64,000 nucleotides of DNA from Aplysia californica (taxonomy: Eukaryota), in assembly GCF_000002075.1 (NCBI RefSeq), contig NW_004797650.1, positions 298,249 through 362,248 on the forward strand, read 5' to 3'. Positions 36,101 through 46,900 of this stretch are shown piece by piece. The stretch's first letter is position 1. Each line of letters begins with the position of its first letter. Below the pieces are notes generated by a model. It saw only the letters and a list, made by a program, of their open reading frames with translations. It was not told the DNA's origin and did not search any database. The position numbers and the translations under genes were made by a program.

Positions 36101-39100
36101 ACACCCATAACTCAGCTCCTGGTGGGGCATCATGGACTGGATAACCCCATTGCTTGTGTCGCCAAAGACCTTGAGTCTGTGACAAGTGAAGCTCCTGCAC
36201 ATTGTACCGAGATAAAACTTCTCCCAAAGCTTTAGGAAACAGATGAAAGTGATGAACTGAAATAAAAATAAAGAGGTTGTAAAAGAAATATCCTATTATA
36301 ACGTATGTACTTTTCTGATATAACACAAATATCGTAGTAGTTTTCATGCTGTATTGGTCTACATATCATGTCTGTGACATTAGCAGACATTGTGCGTTTC
36401 AAGTAAAATTAGCTACAGTCGAGCAAAGATAATGCGAACTTTGAGTTCATGGATAGCTTGAACGATATGTTATTCCTCAACAGAGCCGCTATATTTTTTT
36501 GGTATTGTCAGCACTGTTTTCTTAAACACCTGCATCAGTGTGTTGAACAGCTCATCTCGAAAAGCCTGACCATTTCCTCAAAACTGTGTTGAATTCAAAT
36601 CACACTGGGTGCATGGTGGGAAAACAATCTCACCCATCATCATTCACACTATCAGGTTACATGAGCTCACCAGACTCGCTCCTGCATAGTGTGACACACA
36701 TACAGAATGTGTCAAGACATATCATTGCTCAATACCTGTAGTGTGTGTAAGGTATAAGAACTTCCTCTTAAAATCTAGTCATGTGAGGGTGGGTGCTAGG
36801 TGATGGGATTTGATCAAAGGAAGGCAGTGTGGTGCTGTACTGGGCCATATGATACGTGAATTGTACTTGTGTGCATGTGTGTATAGTGTATGTGTGGTTG
36901 TTTGAACATGAAGGCATGGATCCGGATGTGATTACACAAGAAGGGTGGGTGGTATGGCCATTAAAACCGTCGCAAATAAATCATTTTCGAGAAATTTTCA
37001 AACCTAATTGCAAAAATATCAAATTATTGGGAAATATAGGAGGGTGACTTGAACCCGCTGAAACCCCCCAGATTTCTTCAAAGTTACAGAATGACACATT
37101 GAGGAATGCAGTGGTCTGTCTCCACCTAAGATTCTATCACTTACAGATACCGGTTTGCTTAAAAGGTCCTGCTGTTTTAAGAAAACATAATTTTTAGTAC
37201 ACAAAAGTCAACACTAAGACCCCAATCTGAAGGATAATATTTGGTGAAGATTCCGCATTTAACATCATAATTTCCTGAACAAAAACTCGGGCAGGTGCAG
37301 TTGATTATGATCAGCCATGCAGTGAAAAAATTGTGATCGTTGTACTGCCCGTTGGTTGCACCACAGATCATCCACTCTCGTGAATGTGACTACAGCTCCG
37401 TAACAAATCTTGATGAAACGATAATGTTTGGAATGTTTGGCCAAAATGGGATCACACTGAGGTGAGAACTCGTTGAGACATTTGAATTCCCCACACATTA
37501 CACTCATATAGATCTGAGCTCTCCACCTGAACTTACATCACAAGGGGGATGGGTAGGCCTACAAGTCCACATCAAAAGGGATCACACCGAACTATTTTGG
37601 ACAGGTAAAGAGAAGTAGAAATGGGAACGGCGTAAATCTTGAGACTCATGATTGGATAAGTGAAAATTGCATGCCTATGCCTTTGTGATTGGTCATCAAG
37701 GTTGACAGCTCTTTGCTCGCCATAAGTCATAAACCCACCCAAGGGAAACGTCACTGGTACATTTCAGTTGATTTCAGAGCAAGGATAGACTATTATTTCA
37801 CCGATTGTGGGCATGATGAGCCACCATGGATTCCCCCCTTGGTGCATTGGATAAGATCCTATTTGCATAAGATTCCGCAGTTTCCTTGCTCCCAAGCACC
37901 GGGATCTCAGGCAGACCACTGTGTATATATACAGTTTGGCTTGATGATAGAGTTTTAATAGAAACCATCAAATATTTTTAAAACTAATAACACTTTGCAA
38001 CAAATATAAAGTCGAAAATCAAGTAAATTGGACAAAGGCGAACCAGAAAACTACAATTCAATACCTGGTCCTATAAATAAAAGTTTATTCAAAGTTAAGG
38101 GCCGTTGCCATTGGCCCACATCACATACACACATTTTATAGAAGAGACTTCCGTGATAATGGCAAAAATCACAAATGACATATATATGATACAACATTTC
38201 AAATTCATGTTGTGTTAAAAAGTAAGTCTTACTCCATAAAAAAATAATAAAACTGGAATGAAGGCTTTATAATTTAGGCCACAGGATACTCTCACCTCTG
38301 GTGAGAATAGTTCATGACCCGATATTCTCACCCACACCCCTGACCCCTCGCAGGCTGATAAAATCACCTAGGCCCAAGGTGGCTTACCGCATGTGGTTGG
38401 GAAATAACTCACGAGTGCTTGGCGCTTCAAGTTTCCTCATGTAGGCCAACTACTGATTAGGCTACCGTTGGCGTAGCCCCTCAATTTAAAAAAAAAAAAA
38501 ATCAAATAGCCTTCTAGATCTAGATTCTAGAGCAGTATCTATGATATGAATAGATGATCTAGAAAACATGTTTCCAGGCGCGCACTCTGTACACCAACAG
38601 TACACACTGAGTGAGAGTGACCCCGGAACGTCCGACGTAATCGGTTGCTGATAATCGCATCTCAGCACAGACGCAGGAAAAGAGTTAATATAATGGTATT
38701 TTTATAGAATCACAACTACTGCTAGATCTATAGATTCTAGGTCTTCTAATCCAGATATCTAGATCTAGATTAGATTTCTAAACTAGATTAGAATAGATTT
38801 CTTGTCTAGAATGGCCACCTCTATTCTCATCCGGAGTGAGAATAGTGCAGGCGAGTCTTGTGGCTATTCTCACCCGGTGCGCGTTCACCAAATTTTGCGT
38901 TCACCCTTAACCACAGAATTCTACACTGTGACAACAGAAAAATTGTAGAATTCTGTGCCGTGAACAAACGTTCCATTACAACTGTAGCCTACTAAAAGCG
39001 TACAATTTTTTCTGTGGGCAGTGGAGAGAGAGAGAGAAAGAGAGAGAGGAGTAGCGCGAGAATTTCCGGGCAAAACAAAATGGCGACCCGCGTAGTTCGG

Positions 39101-39819
39101 CTCGATTCGAAAAGTTAAATAGCCGTAGCATCTTTGTAGACAACCAAATTAATTTACTTTTGTGTTTTAACATCATTTTAAAACTTTGTTTTGGTCAATT
39201 TGATCGTCCACACCGATAGACAGTATTCAGAAAGAGACAGAGAGTGAGAGAAGAGGGGAGGAGTTGATCTTGCGAGAACTTCCGGGCGGGTGAGAATAGC
39301 CACTTTCGTCTAGAATAGACGATGATCTCTCGGCGCTTTTTCGGTAGTTCCCACCCCGCATTTGTTATTCGCCGGTTTTGGCCTCAAGAGTAGGGGGGTT
39401 TCAGGGGGGCTTGCCCCCCTGACCTAATAAAAACAAGGTGGGGGGTTTCACAATTTTACCACAATTTAATGTTTTGCAGTTGTTAGGTTTGACATCTTAG
39501 CTTGCCGCGAATCAAACGTATATAGATCTAGATGTAGGTCAGGCTCTATCAAATAAGGGGGGTGGGAACTACCGAAAAAGCGCCGATCTCTCTACTGACT
39601 CTACTCACAAGTTGTTGGATCGTGGAGAGATGCGTTCCATTTTGTGGTAAACTGAAAATGAGAATAAATATAGCCTCGGGAGAGCGGCTTGATTAAAAGT
39701 TCCTCCGTAAAGCTGTCCTTCTGTTTAGAAGAAACACTAGTCGACACCAGGAAGCAAAGGAAAACCTTGAAGTAAACAGAAACTGCCCGACACCGGGACC
39801 AGCCGCTGGTAGTCGCCAT
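27680..39819 (-). CDS. PIGT: GPI transamidase component PIG-T (Gpi16); 9 exons found, one inferred missing
   Basis: Minus-strand exons 39819-39609, 36256-36079, 35341-35104, 34771-34685, [missing phase 0 to 1 exon, probably in gap 33507-34225], 32964-32870, 31918-31714, 30250-30101, 29475-29229, 28681-28520, 27860-27680. Signal peptide, then [36 protein letters not shown]-like, [34 protein letters not shown] and [15 protein letters not shown]. Confidence 0.93.
28047..28248 (+). mobile_element. 3' UTR fragment of the same LINE
   Basis: Matches 13460-13640; 12-bp TSD acaacaggatag. Confidence 0.8.
28520..28681 (-). CDS. PIGT: PIGT exon (transmembrane segment)
   Basis: [40 protein letters not shown]. 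Confidence 0.93.
28738..28870. repeat. 55-bp tandem repeat (about 2.4 units)
   Basis: Unit tgtgaccgtgaatttctcaagcttgagtatt...aaacc. Confidence 0.85.
29229..29475 (-). CDS. PIGT: PIGT exon
   Basis: [18 protein letters not shown]...[16 protein letters not shown]. Confidence 0.92.
30101..30250 (-). CDS. PIGT: PIGT exon
   Basis: [15 protein letters not shown]...[16 protein letters not shown]. Confidence 0.9.
30405..31624. mobile_element. Non-autonomous hAT-like element
   Basis: Perfect 14-bp TIR CAGACCTGCCACTC; flanked by tgtaac on both sides (6 bp). Confidence 0.8.
30590..30633. repeat. (TG)n microsatellite
   Basis: Dinucleotide run. Confidence 0.9.
31714..31918 (-). CDS. PIGT: PIGT exon
   Basis: [11 protein letters not shown]...[11 protein letters not shown]. 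Confidence 0.88.
32168..32695 (+). mobile_element. tRNA-derived SINE (Deu/Nin-like domain), full length
   Basis: A box TGGCCTAGAGG, B box GGTTCGAATC; central CCTTCTCGGACAAGG...GTTAAAGATCC...AAGAGTAGG; stem-loop tail; 12-bp TSD gaacagggaaaa (32156-32167 and 32696-32707). Confidence 0.9.
32870..32964 (-). CDS. PIGT: PIGT exon
   Basis: [32 protein letters not shown]. Confidence 0.88.
33104..33156. repeat. (AG)n microsatellite
   Basis: Dinucleotide run. Confidence 0.9.
34370..34630 (+). mobile_element. Longer relative of the ~175-bp family with an internal long hairpin
   Basis: Shares the pyrimidine-rich body and the 3' stem-loop; extra 34460-34565 folds back on itself. Confidence 0.65.
34685..34771 (-). 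CDS. PIGT: PIGT exon 4
   Basis: [29 protein letters not shown]. Confidence 0.88.
35104..35341 (-). CDS. PIGT: PIGT exon 3
   Basis: [22 protein letters not shown]...[23 protein letters not shown]. Confidence 0.93.
35742..36007 (+). mobile_element. tRNA-derived SINE with Meta/MESC-like central domain
   Basis: A box TGGCAGAGCGG, B box GGTTCGAGCC, central CCACCCAGCAGTAATGGGTACCTGAC...AAAGCGGC...CTGGCCACCCTACC, (CTTTA)n tail. Confidence 0.8.
36079..36256 (-). CDS. PIGT: PIGT exon 2
   Basis: [13 protein letters not shown]...[11 protein letters not shown]. Confidence 0.92.
36400..37950 (-). mobile_element. Possible highly decayed LTR-retrotransposon pol remnant
   Basis: Weak fragments [16 protein letters not shown] (integrase-like) and [10 protein letters not shown] (RNase H-like); many stops and frameshifts. 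Confidence 0.3.
38912..38957. mobile_element. TIR-only hairpin (putative excision footprint)
   Basis: CACAGAATTCTACACT-16 nt-TGTAGAATTCTGTG; flanks cccttaac/ccgtgaac (6/8 match). Confidence 0.65.
39120..39312 (+). repeat. Interspersed repeat with CTATTCTCACCCGGGTGAGAATAG-type palindromes; second copy at 45390-45725
   Basis: Near-identical gccgtagcatctttgtagac...gatagacagtattcagaaagag blocks. Confidence 0.75.
39332..39584. mobile_element. Merlin-like MITE
   Basis: 26-bp TIR GGCGCTTTTTCGGTAGTTCCCACCCC; 8-bp TSD gatctctc. Confidence 0.85.
39609..39819 (-). CDS. PIGT: PIGT exon 1
   Basis: MATTSG...[27 protein letters not shown]; donor gtgagt. Confidence 0.9.
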
Positions 39820-40208
39820 TTTGTAAATTCAGCAGTGAAGAAAGACGCCGAGAAGGCTCGCAGAATTTGACCTTCGTTAACTACTTATTTCGCCACAATA
39901 ATGACTCGATGAGTCGACGTCTGTCATAGGCCTGTATTCCTGTATATTAGTAGTCCAAAAGAGAATGTCTGCACTTTAACTTTAAGCATGCATTTGGATA
40001 ACTGAAAGTCAGTCACAAAGTCAGGATAACAAAAACACGTAATCTTGGAACAAGAATGAAATGAAATTATGATTTAACACATCGGGTCAGTAGAACTATT
40101 GGCCAAACGGTCGGACGTCTGTTCACCTGCGCCTGACCCAAGGAGATTACTTACCTTGGCCTGGCCTGATCCCAAGCCTAGGCAAGCGATAATTATATTG
40201 CTCAGGTC

Positions 40209-40241
40209 CACAGAATTCTACACTTAGTATAGAATTATGTG
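40209..40241. mobile_element. TIR-only hairpin (putative excision footprint)
   Basis: 33 bp; perfect 8-bp TSD ctcaggtc. Confidence 0.8.
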
Positions 40242-40755
40242 CTCAGGTCACACATCATCATATCCAGACCTGAGAAAAAAAGACGGTTTCTTGCGTTTGC
40301 AGTAGCACATCCAGATCCATGCCCTAAACAAAAAATGGACAGAATTCCATGGTTTACAACAATTATTTATTTCTAAAGATTATTCTCTGTTTTAAAAAAA
40401 AATCCACCATTATCAGCAAAACAAAAAAACCCCAACTAAATTGAGTTCCGCTAGTATCTCTTAATCTACTCGGATCTGCTTATGAGGTAAAAATTAAGGT
40501 ACAGAGTAATGATCGGGGAGTAGGAGAAACAGTGGTGGGGTGCAATTGGTGCAAGCGCTCCACCTAACCTTCACCCCCCCCCCCCTCCTTCATAATTGTT
40601 CTAAGCCAGTCAGTGCTCTAGATCTACATTACTACATCCTTGCGATCCGCCACCCGCTGGCTGCGCCAGTGAAGAGACAGGCAGCGAGGACGTTTATGCT
40701 CGTCGCACCGCTTGCGGTAGTGTCTGCTGGGAGCAAGCAAAATCTTTGCACCAAA

Positions 40756-40785
40756 CACAGAATTCTACAAGTGTAGAATTCTGTG
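40756..40785. mobile_element. TIR-only hairpin (putative excision footprint)
   Basis: 30 bp; perfect 8-bp TSD gcaccaaa. Confidence 0.85.
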
Positions 40786-41833
40786 GCACCAAAGTAATTT
40801 TGTCACTGTAGATAGATAAATCAAGGGATCGTTCTTCCCGCACAAGAAGAAAGGTGCATGAAACTGCTCTTCGCAGCATCAGTTTGGTGCAAGCTAAGAA
40901 TTTGATCCACGTTTCCACTAGCCCATCTACTACACTAGTAGAATCTACGGTAACTCAATGAAGAATGGGTATCAAAAATTTTGTCTCCCTCTATTTTGTA
41001 GCAAGTCCTGGTGCTGCACGAAGTAATTAGAAATCTTTAAATCTTCTCAGGTTGTGAGCATAGTGAGTAGTTAGTATAGTTTCACTTTATTGCAACTTTT
41101 ATGCGGTTTCATATAGAAACAGTTGTAAATATCGATAGATGTAGATTACGGGATGTCCTGCAGATCCAAATTGACTTTCTCTAGAAATCTTAATAGCAGC
41201 TACTAAGCCTATTGCCCATTGAATCACTTTCCAATTATGCACCACCTTGTCTGCAACCCACGCGATGCCACTGAGGAGAAAATAATCTAGGAAGAATTAC
41301 GGGGATTATGATCAGCTGGTGGTCGACCTGCTTTATAGATCTAGATCCTCTAGTGTAGTTTGATCAGTATGGCATATGGCGCTTTAATAGTGAGCCCCTC
41401 AGCCTCTCTACAGTTTCAATTACCGCAGCAGATCTGAACACTTTCTAAAAGGTAGACAGGAAAAAAAAGTTCAGTTACTTAATGTACCAAACATTTTGTA
41501 AGGAGTCACATTATTTGTATTTGGTTGTTTGATCGAGTAAAGAGAAGCACATCGACACAATAATGGTCAGTTATAAGTGCTGGGGGAAAAGTTAGACAGA
41601 AGCAACAGAGGGAAAGTGTGAAGAACCAGGACCTATAGGCCTTAAGCCTAGACCAGGACCTAGTGGCACAGTCCCTCTAACCACTTGCACGTCATTGTTT
41701 TGCGCTGATCATCCATGGTGCTGATACATTAAATTATTATCTTAAAATTCTATTAAACTAGCCAATAACTAGGGACATTTTGTAACGAAGCACATTTAAA
41801 AAATAGGCAGAATAAAAAAAATAAATAATAAAA

Positions 41834-43968: not shown

Positions 43969-46900
43969 GTATTGTGACCACAGGTTCTTTAACAACAAAA
44001 AAGGGGGCAAAACTTGCACCAAGTCGACTACTAAACTAAACTAAGTCAAGACCTCCTAAGTAGATCGAATGCCTACCACCAAGTGTGTAGAGTGTAGAAA
44101 ATCTAGTGTAGCTCTTATGCCACAGTAGCAGTAGGCAGTAGGGTAGATGTAGATTCTAGTAGATCTAAGATCTAATGTAGATTGGGAAGATTGAACAATA
44201 CCGGACCACTTGTTACGACTTGTATTATTGCGCCTTGCGTGAGCCAGATTACTTCCATAACAACACCGCTCTGCCGCATGCGCTTCAATTCATGAGAGGA
44301 GGAAGGCTAGCATTGGATGGTCCGACATTCTTCATTCACACACATCTTGGAAGGGTGGGGTTCAAGGGGGGTCTCCCTCCTGACAATTCAAATCTTGGAG
44401 GGGTGGGGAGGGGGGGTCACCCCTGACAAACTACTTTATGAACAGATATATAGGCCTGCCGGTCCGAAATTCATCATTCCGGTTGTAAGAAGAGGGAAGT
44501 TGTTTGGGGGGTTCAGGGGGGTTTCCCCCCTGACAACGGTTGGGGATTTTTCATTGAGAGTTATAAAAATCGATGTTATCTCACAATGCTCTTCGAAGAA
44601 TGCCGGACCGCGCGGGGAAGGGAGAGGCGGTGGCTCGCGCGCTCGGTCTCGCGATGTTCCACACGCTGTGTTCTTTAGGCCCCGCCGTGCAGGCACATGA
44701 TCCGTGGTCTGGCATGCTTCGCTGTGGTCCGGAATGCTTCGCCGTGAATGCAGGCTCTTGGTTTAGCCTTAGGGCCTTAGGTGAAGTTTCCCGGACTAGG
44801 TAGGCCTACATTGTTGTCTAAATGAAGTATCCCGGACCACGGTACGGTTGAGAGAAGGATGCTGTACTACACAAATTAGTTCCTGCTAAATTCCATTAAA
44901 AATGATTTTGTAATTGTTTTTCATCTCAATTTCCCTTCCATACATTATAAAAATAGCATTACGATTTTTAAAAAGCCATTAACCGCTCTTTTAACTGTGC
45001 TGAACTCCTAAAATACCAGCGGTTGAGACATAGGCAAAAGTAGTCCCAGTCCGCTGGTCCGGTATTCTTCAATCTTACCTGTAGATTTCTAGATCTAGAA
45101 TCTAGCACCCTAAAATTTTATTCATTTTGTGTGTGTGATAGACTAGAGTGCCAACACTGACGGACACACAGATGACACAGTTCTAGATGTCTAGATCTAC
45201 ACTACACTACTACACTCTAGTGCGATTTTGTAGTTTCGTTCGTTAAAGTCAGGAGTGGGGGGGTTTCAGGGGGGCTTGTCCCCCTGACCGAATAAAAATA
45301 TGGAGGTGGGGGGGTTCAGGGGGGCATGCCCGACTGAATTTTATCCTAATTTGATGTTTTGCAGTTAGGTTGCATCCCTGCTCTTTGCCTGAGCCGTAGC
45401 ATCTTTGTAGACGACCAAATTAATTTACTTTTGTGTTTTAACATCATTTTTAAACTTTGTTTTGGTCAATTTGATCGTCCACACCGATAGACAGTATTCA
45501 GAAAGAGAAGAGGGGAGGAGTAGATCTTGCGAGAACTTCCGGGCAAATTTTTTCTTTGCTTTTATCCATTCGATCATACACACAGATAGAAAATATTCAG
45601 AAATTAGGAAAAGCAGGTCTTGTTTCACACCGGGTGAGAATAGCCTACGGTGGCAAGTCTCACCCGGGGTGAGAGGTCGATCGTATTTTTATTCTCACCC
45701 CGGGTGAGGATAGCCACTTCCTTCTAGATATCTAGGTCTAGTACTGTCTCGGCTGTCCGGACAAGTCGGCCAACCGCCTAAACAGTGTTGTTCCAACTCA
45801 AACAGTGTTGTTCCAACTCGTTTTGAAGCCAATTTTGAATGGATATAATCTTGTTAATTTATAAATCAATGTAATCTTTGCTGGGTAAATGCTAACAATT
45901 TAGTGTTTTGTTTCCCTTTCACCTGTTTTCATTGAATTTTTGCGACAGAGCCAGTTGAATCGAAAGTACGTCCCATCATTTTTCATGGTCTCCTTAACTT
46001 GAACTATGCATACTCCTAAGGTCATAGACATGCGCAGATGCTATAGGCCTCTTACTACGTCACATGACCTGTGACCGAAGGGAGAGGAGTTTTTGTGCCT
46101 TTTGTCTATTCTGGGAACAAGTTAAGGGGAAGCCCTTCTTGCATCTGGAGTGATGTGGTGGGAGGGCCGAGTCAACAGGACAAAAAATATTGCATGTCCA
46201 GGCTGTTCGGCCAGGGTTGGCCGAGCTTTGTGGATGCAGTTCGCGCATATCGGCCACGTGCACAATATTTTTGGCCAGCTCTATTTCTCCGAACATTCGG
46301 GAAAATAAACTAGAACTCTATTTTTCAGAACGGTTTCCATTCTCGAGATTTGTCTATAATAATTATGAGTGGGGTGGCCCATGTGAGTGTGTGCGTGTGT
46401 TTAGGCCTAACCTGTGAACGGGGGGGGGGGGGGATTTTTTTTTTTAACTTGAAGGACTTTTTTGGGGGGCTGGATGACTAAATGCAAAATAGGTTACTGC
46501 CAAGGTCGATCAGTCTTGTTTTCTCGCAGTACCTTTTGAAGGTATTTTCAAACAAAGTATAGTCCGGGAACGTTGCCCGAACCACAGCTGAAATATCTGA
46601 ATATTCAGACATTTAAAAATCTCTAGCTCTAGAAATTGAATTTGATGCATAAAATGGTTCTTCCCTGTCATCGCAGAATGAAAGATGACACTTAAATCTC
46701 GCAAATGAAAAAAAAACCTCGAGAACGGAAACCGTTCGGAGAAAGAGTTCAAGTTTATTTTCCCGAACGTTTTGAGAAATATTCACTTCGATGTGTTTTA
46801 AAAATATATTTTCAAGCTTATGGAGTTGCTTGAAGTTTCTTTTTATTTGACAGAAGGGTGTAAAATGGATTTCATAATTTGAATGAGTGGTTTTGAGGGT

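What the first reader, a model, noticed from the sequence alone, without database searches (positions are those of the whole stretch)
38904..40793. Three TIR-only hairpins with 8-bp TSDs around the PIGT start: apparent P-element-type excision footprints
Seen: 40756-40785 is CACAGAATTCTACA+AGTGTAGAATTCTGTG between perfect gcaccaaa repeats. 40209-40241 is CACAGAATTCTACACTT+AGTATAGAATTATGTG between perfect ctcaggtc repeats. 38912-38957 has the same two ends with a 16-nt filler between cccttaac and ccgtgaac. Each keeps only 14-17 nt of one terminal repeat (CACAGAATTCTACACT) per side, each joint differs, and all three lie within about 1 kb of the PIGT ATG; I saw none elsewhere in the window. Established: P transposase makes 8-bp TSDs, P ends start with CA, it cuts with a 17-nt stagger so end-joining leaves about 15-17 bp of each end, and Drosophila P prefers promoters. 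Inference: this housekeeping promoter was hit at least three independent times by a P/THAP9-like transposon that then excised. That would be a fossil record of promoter targeting and staggered cleavage outside insects.
Basis: partly seen in the sequence, partly recalled or inferred. Interest (0 to 1): 0.85.

Follow-up and report, generated by a model that had tools for sequence, protein, structure and literature searches.

The report
P-transposon excision scars beside PIGT
Two of the three little hairpins beside this gene are repair scars left where a P-type jumping gene cut itself out, and the third only rode in inside another mobile element; several hundred such scars across this gastropod-like genome record how a P transposase cuts DNA outside insects, probably leaving 18-base rather than the fly's 17-base tails.

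Summary
All three hairpins are real. The parent exists: a 4,955-bp element on contig C986 with these exact ends encodes an open THAP + P-type transposase, and 1.3-3-kb non-coding copies carry perfect 8-bp duplications. Genome-wide there are about 700 stand-alone hairpins of up to 42 nt plus about 85 14-nt microhomology joins. Nearly all sampled ones sit in their own 8-bp duplication, and they show the same junction classes as repaired Drosophila P excision sites. Arms stop at 18 nt (19 or more in about 1%), so an 18-nt tail is favoured over 17. The 33-nt (40209) and 30-nt (40756) hairpins are independent scars; paralogous empty sites confirm the second. The 46-nt one (38912) is not an independent hit: it is a fixed passenger inside a 495-bp MITE with a 9-bp duplication (about 1,300 copies) in PIGT intron 1. 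'Each joint differs' is misleading, since the 33-mer is the stereotyped main product. Promoter targeting is not established: scars cluster at hot spots shared with that MITE and have slightly CpG-richer flanks, but 12 unselected scars showed no recognisable first exon. The scan found this family before on other DNA (s1-700934).

The parts
40201..40249 (.). Independent P excision scar: 33-nt join (17+16 arms, the genome's main class) inside the 8-bp duplication ctcaggtc, in single-copy DNA 390 bp upstream of the PIGT ATG
   Evidence: spanned without a gap of its size by single contigs of three other samples, so probably old and fixed
40748..40793 (.). Independent P excision scar: 30-nt join (17- and 14-nt arms sharing one T) inside the 8-bp duplication gcaccaaa
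   Evidence: this flank-plus-arm junction is unique in the genome; three paralogues of the host repeat lack it, with a gap of 38 bp = 30 + 8 in the closest and a single target copy
38904..38965 (.). 46-nt ancient P scar with filler and decayed 8-bp duplication; a passenger copied as part of the MITE below, not a hit at this locus
   Evidence: same flanks and filler in the carrier copies examined; about 74% of 1,814 exact hairpins are of this type
38813..39307 (.). 495-bp multicopy MITE (Mutator-like by G-ended imperfect terminal repeats and 9-bp duplication GTCTAGAAT at 38804-38812 and 39308-39316) in PIGT intron 1
40530..41273 (.). 744-bp hAT-like MITE (CAGTGG...CCACTG ends, 8-bp duplication aggagaaa) into which the 30-nt scar's parent inserted
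39609..39819 (-). PIGT (Gpi16) first coding exon
   Evidence: Pfam Gpi16 E 1.2e-5; downstream exons with conserved motifs
39330..39586 (.). Unrelated 257-bp element with 39-nt terminal inverted repeats just inside intron 1 (context only)

Best explanation
A P-superfamily transposon (23-bp terminal repeats; autonomous copy G000:C986:103647-108601, minus strand; many 1.3-3-kb non-coding derivatives) inserted with an 8-bp duplication and later excised. SHOWN: the parent, its P-type transposase, 8-bp duplications around long copies and scars alike, empty paralogous sites, and the arm-length ceiling. INFERRED, by analogy to Drosophila P: the transposase cut one strand at the element's tip and the other about 18 nt inside, so both flanks kept 3' single-stranded tails of terminal repeat; end joining of the two tails gave the hairpins. 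With an 18-nt tail ending in TA, the main 33-mer is a 3-nt tip overlap with a central mismatch, the 34-mer is the TA:TA join, the 14-mer is the 6-nt GAATTC microhomology join, and the longer ones carry short templated fillers. The scars are inert end products. At PIGT two such events happened independently; the third hairpin is an older scar that formed once inside a Mutator-like MITE and was then amplified about 1,300-fold with it.
For: Parent with identical ends and an open 855-codon second exon; Pfam THAP, Tnp_P_element, RNaseH_N, GBD, RNaseH_C; Drosophila P transposase best PDB match, E 7e-28, catalytic motifs aligned. Five long copies all with perfect 8-bp duplications. 34 of 34 sampled 30-39-nt scars have distinct 8-bp duplications, 30 perfect; 19 of 21 filler scars and 15 of 20 14-mers too. 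Class counts: 326 perfect 32-34-mers (39:10:1 for 33:34:32 among the first 50), 92 with 3-16-nt centres, 113 14-mers against 0 in the control, only 17 arms of 19 nt or more. Same junction classes as Drosophila P repair products (PMC2895639 Table 1). Hand tally of the 100 arms: base 17 kept 77, base 18 kept 50 of 77, base 19 kept 6 of 50; leaving out the two templated classes, base 18 kept 18 of 24, p 7e-6 at 30%.
Against: No site was seen in both states (full element in one haplotype, scar in another). The dominance of the 33-mer over the perfectly paired 34-mer is not what simple pairing predicts. An A at position 18 could be added by repair polymerases onto a 17-nt tail (at 50% A bias the tally gives only p about 0.01), and the 30-nt join in this window is most simply a 17-nt arm pairing at its last T. 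The autonomous copy's own flanks do not form a duplication.
Confidence: 0.88

Rival explanations
1. The stand-alone hairpins are a mobile 33-bp micro-MITE (terminal repeats only) moved in trans by the P transposase, with length variants arising afterwards.
For: One junction dominates (about 78% of perfect 32-34-mers); each copy has its own 8-bp duplication.
Against: A continuous spectrum from 14 to 48 nt with many one-off fillers, all in 8-bp duplications; a sharp arm ceiling at 18 although the terminal repeat is 23 nt; the 33-mer lacks the sub-terminal repeat found 44-90 nt inside both parent ends; two cuts staggered by 17-18 nt would leave no duplex in a 33-bp unit (inference from the P mechanism); mutated 33-mers are all different.
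Confidence: 0.05
2. Same scar origin, but the tail is 17 nt as in Drosophila; the extra A is added during repair (templated from the partner tail or untemplated).
For: 34-mer equals 17+17; 33-mer equals 17+16; 30-mer equals 17+14 with 1-nt overlap; 32 of 50 arms with base 18 continue AG, which is copyable from the partner tail; Drosophila fillers often start with A or T.
Against: Base 18 is kept in 18 of 24 arms outside the templated classes and on both sides in 11 of 50 filler scars; with a 17-nt tail ending TT the commonest product would have no tip pairing at all.
Confidence: 0.25
3. The hairpins are extreme internal deletions made by aborted gap repair (SDSA) from a sister or ectopic template, not direct joins of the cut tails.
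For: A few scars keep 21-32 nt of one end, and 1.3-2.7-kb internally deleted copies exist.
Against: Aborted synthesis should give a broad range of arm lengths beyond the cut; only 17 arms of about 1,450 exceed 18 nt.
Confidence: 0.05
4. One reading: this P family targets promoters, as in Drosophila, and the PIGT promoter is such a hot spot.
For: Two independent scars within 940 bp upstream of the PIGT ATG and none elsewhere in 64 kb; scars cluster (2 pairs within 3 kb among 50, p about 0.001) and lie near the carrier MITE (5 of 20 within 12 kb against 0.57 expected, p 0.0004); flank CpG o/e 0.74 against 0.64 in controls, p 0.013.
Against: The CpG shift is small and not promoter-specific; ETS and YY1 motifs not enriched; within 1.3 kb of 12 unselected scars only one plausible first-exon start and no Pfam match to a host gene in the 20 long frames scanned (a low-power test); no TSS could be placed. 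Local hopping or open, unmethylated DNA explains clustering equally well.
Confidence: 0.4

Closest known systems
Drosophila melanogaster P element and its excision-site repair products (PMC7776569; PMC2895639 Table 1)
   Same: THAP + RNase H with GTP-binding insertion transposase, 8-bp duplication, CA-starting terminal repeats, long 3' tails of terminal repeat left at the donor site and joined by long microhomology, short tip microhomology or templated fillers; tail ends in TA if it is 18 nt here.
   Different: Terminal repeat 23 bp with unrelated sequence; arm ceiling 18 against 17; here the products are several hundred natural germline scars in an assembly, not laboratory events; one short join dominates; target motif has T at -3 and A at +3 (52 of 68) where Drosophila has A and T (ATRGTCCGGACWAT, PMC2577343), with the G..C core shared.
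THAP9 / Pdre-type P transposons of other animals (zebrafish Pdre2, PMC10983969; THAP9-like protein of Elysia marginata, 41% identical)
   Same: Same domain set and 8-bp duplication; closest relatives are invertebrate THAP9-like transposases.
   Different: The zebrafish paper reports excision with flanking deletions in cell assays and does not map a stagger for the fish enzyme in the passages read; no paper found describing natural tail-to-tail scars outside flies.
Mutator-like (MULE) MITEs
   Same: Carrier of the 46-nt unit has G-ended terminal repeats and mostly 9-bp duplications.
   Different: Its transposase partner was not sought; terminal repeats are short and imperfect.

Membership tests
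P superfamily | Transposase with THAP domain, HTH, and RNase H fold split by a GTP-binding insertion | tested here: met
   Pfam PF05485, PF12017, PF21787, PF21788, PF21789 on the parent's second exon; PDB 6p5a E 7e-28
P superfamily | Catalytic D, D, E and the GTP-contacting D | tested here: met
   Motifs FDAM, VCDG and SQDHLE align with the Drosophila catalytic motifs
P superfamily | The transposase gene lies between the same ends as the hairpin arms | tested here: met
   C986 element, 4,955 bp, both ends start with the 23-bp repeat
P superfamily | 8-bp target duplication and 5'-CA termini | tested here: met
   5 of 5 long copies, 34 of 34 short scars; 7- and 9-bp registers fail
P superfamily | Sub-terminal inverted sites for transposase binding | tested here: inconclusive
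   A shared sub-terminal repeat is present inside both ends; binding not tested
P superfamily | 17-nt staggered cleavage | tested here: inconclusive
   A long stagger is supported by the arm cliff; the data favour 18 over 17 but cannot map the cut
P superfamily | GTP needed as cofactor | not testable with these tools
   Domain present only
P superfamily | 14-bp palindromic target motif | tested here: met
   Strongest positions -3/+3 and duplication positions 1/8, outer bases differ from Drosophila
P superfamily | Preference for promoters | tested here: inconclusive
Mobile micro-MITE | One fixed length and junction in all copies | tested here: not met
   14-48-nt spectrum with private fillers
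hAT superfamily (for the hairpins' parent) | hAT transposase between the ends | tested here: not met
   The parent encodes a P-type enzyme
MULE MITE (carrier) | 9-bp target duplication, G-ended terminal repeats | tested here: met
   9 bp in the window copy and four other copies, 8 bp apparent in two
MULE MITE (carrier) | MuDR-type transposase partner with matching ends | not tested
   not sought

The most novel reading that the evidence does not exclude
A molluscan P transposase cuts with an 18-nt stagger and reads a target motif with reversed outer bases, so the long stagger is a superfamily trait of variable length; its roughly 800 germline scars form a natural dataset of end joining of one defined substrate and a map of past P hot spots that are in fact promoters.
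Probability: 0.35. Interest if true: 0.65.

Novelty: new variant of a known kind. Interest (0 to 1): 0.5.

Why it matters
The long staggered cut is the oddest feature of P transposition and, in the papers read here, is documented only for the Drosophila enzyme. Natural scars give sequence evidence that a distant P family in a gastropod-like animal cuts the same way, probably one base longer, which a structure model or an excision assay on the open-frame C986 copy can test directly. The scars also give hundreds of germline repair outcomes from one identical pair of tails, and they mark former insertion sites that repeat annotators miss. The passenger case is a warning: scar-like hairpins can be multiplied by other elements and must not be counted as independent hits.

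Tried and rejected
Comparing the non-coding long copies with 3-kb loci around P transposase hits found no link at first; the link appeared only after fetching the flanks. A protein search with the THAP-like remnant returned non-coding copies only. The one RNA run laid had no reads on PIGT exon 1, so no TSS. A first CpG comparison against the window itself (0.83 against 0.51) overstated the effect; genome-wide controls gave 0.74 against 0.64. First-exon search near 12 scars was blank. Rejected: chance palindromes, hAT parent, mobile 33-mer, three independent hits.

Full report
Observation. The three hairpins are present exactly as described and far above chance: six arm matches against 0.73 expected. 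A relaxed scan finds no other hairpin of this shape inside an 8-bp duplication in the 64 kb. The gene is PIGT (Gpi16 match; conserved later exons), ATG at 39819 on the minus strand, exon 1 ending at 39609. The 33-nt and 30-nt hairpins are 390 and 937 bp upstream of the ATG; the 46-nt one is in intron 1. The host is a 927-Mb animal assembly in 4,332 pieces. From memory that size matches the Aplysia californica assembly; this was not tested, but the nearest named relative of the transposase is from the gastropod Elysia marginata.

The family. The 14-nt arm occurs 5,689 times in the genome against 3 for the control. Some pairs bound elements of 1.3-3 kb; five examined have a 23-bp terminal repeat, distinct left and right sub-terminal regions and perfect 8-bp duplications, but no long frame. 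Examining the ends of three P-transposase loci gave an autonomous-type parent on C986 (103647-108601, minus, 4,955 bp) with the same two ends. It has a short THAP-start exon and an open 855-codon second exon that carries THAP, P-element HTH, RNase H N, GTP-binding insertion and RNase H C domains and matches Drosophila P transposase (E 7e-28) with the catalytic motifs in register. The parent's own flanks are not a duplication, which is unexplained.

The short forms. There are 727 hairpins of up to 42 nt with exact 10-nt arms (about 8% of the listed ones are carrier variants). Of 326 perfect 32-34-mers, the first 50 split 39:10:1 into 33, 34 and 32 nt. Ninety-two have both arms of at least 16 nt and a 3-16-nt centre, mostly one-off fillers, with one recurrent 36-mer. 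I predicted from the excision model a long-microhomology class joined through the internal GAATTC; the 14-mer occurs 113 times against 0 for the control, and 15 of 20 sampled lie in an 8-bp duplication with at most one mismatch. All 34 sampled 30-39-mers have their own 8-bp duplication, as do 19 of 21 filler scars. These are the classes reported for repair of Drosophila P excision sites: long microhomology, short tip microhomology, and templated insertions between full-length tails (PMC2895639 Table 1). A mobile 33-mer does not predict this spectrum, lacks the sub-terminal repeat of the parent, and could not survive two long-stagger cuts as a duplex (inference).

Tail length. Although the terminal repeat runs 23 nt, only 17 arms genome-wide reach 19 nt or more in a short hairpin, about 1%. 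In my hand tally of the 100 arms listed, base 17 is kept in 77, base 18 in 50 of those, base 19 in 6 of those. Many base-18 cases continue in a way that could be copied from the partner tail; leaving out the two templated classes, base 18 is kept in 18 of 24 (p 7e-6 at a 30% chance rate), and 11 of 50 scars keep it on both sides. An 18-nt tail ending in TA also gives tip pairing for both main products. A 17-nt tail with A added in repair is not excluded; I put 18 at about 70-75%. An earlier follow-up in this scan (s1-700934) reached 18 on another window; that is not independent support, and the tally here is my own.

The three sites. 40209-40241 is a main-class scar with two decay changes in single-copy DNA; contigs of three other samples span it without a matching gap, so it is probably old and fixed. 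40756-40785 lies inside a 744-bp hAT-like MITE (40530-41273, 8-bp duplication); the junction is unique in the genome and paralogous MITE copies have a single target copy and lack the 30 + 8 bp, which directly shows insertion with an 8-bp duplication. 38912-38957 is different: every carrier copy examined has the same flanks and nearly the same filler, because it is part of a 495-bp MITE (38813-39307) with a 9-bp duplication. About 74% of the 1,814 exact hairpins are of this kind, roughly 1,300 copies. Its imperfect 8-mers are the family's decayed ancestral duplication plus one private change. So PIGT received two P hits, not three.

Promoter targeting. Scars are clustered: 2 pairs within 3 kb among 50 (p about 0.001), and 5 of 20 within 12 kb of a carrier MITE against 0.57 expected (p 0.0004). 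Their flanks are slightly CpG-richer than control sites (0.74 against 0.64, p 0.013) but not richer in ETS or YY1 motifs. Within 1.3 kb of 12 unselected scars I found one plausible first-exon start and no Pfam match to a host gene; this test is weak. The RNA run gave no TSS. Shared hot spots are shown; that they are promoters is open. The target motif shares the G..C core of Drosophila P but has T at -3 and A at +3 (52 of 68 symmetrised sites) where the fly motif has A and T (PMC2577343).

Comparison and verdict. The element is a member of the P superfamily by transposase, ends and duplication; the scars work like Drosophila P donor-site repair products (PMC7776569). Paper searches found no description of natural tail-to-tail P scars outside flies, though most subscription papers are not covered. 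The mechanism is known; the natural archive, the probable 18-nt tail and the altered target motif are new variants. The scan has already recorded the family on other windows, and this locus adds the passenger case, an empty-site proof and the 14-nt class.

Noticed in passing
window 38813-41273: The PIGT 5' region is a stack of DNA transposons: Mutator-like MITE, a 257-bp TIR element, a P scar, and an hAT-like MITE holding a second P scar; fragments of the first two recur at 45249-45544.
   Followed up: partly
G000:C986:103647-108601 (L069/L054/L068): The autonomous P copy carries a 22-nt scar of its own family (duplication gtcacgag) in its 5' leader, and its outer flanks do not form a duplication.
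   Followed up: partly
G000:C820:93000-100200 (L066/L055/L067): A second full-length P-family element (892-codon frame, 40% identical transposase) with different, long terminal repeats starting CATAGACC between TA runs, nested in an element with an 8-bp duplication; its excision scars were not sought.
   Followed up: no
L121 and L122 (G000:C12:2779341-2780146): Two 14-mers 792 bp apart share one 8-bp duplication on their outer sides only, as if a segment bounded by 14-mers had been inserted or inverted as a unit.
   Followed up: no
L120 and L134: Two 14-mer scars with the same duplication and flanks: a second case of a scar carried as passenger in another repeat.
   Followed up: no
window 39060-39090 and P element ends: Both the carrier MITE and the P ends contain promoter-like words (AAAATGGCG, CGGAAG), which may confound promoter-motif tests and might affect neighbouring genes.
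   Followed up: no
scar flanks L040-L050, L072-L091: AGATCT is enriched near scars (1.08 against 0.18 per kb, p about 0.02), matching other notes of TA-GATC-TA units at the same hot spots.
   Followed up: partly
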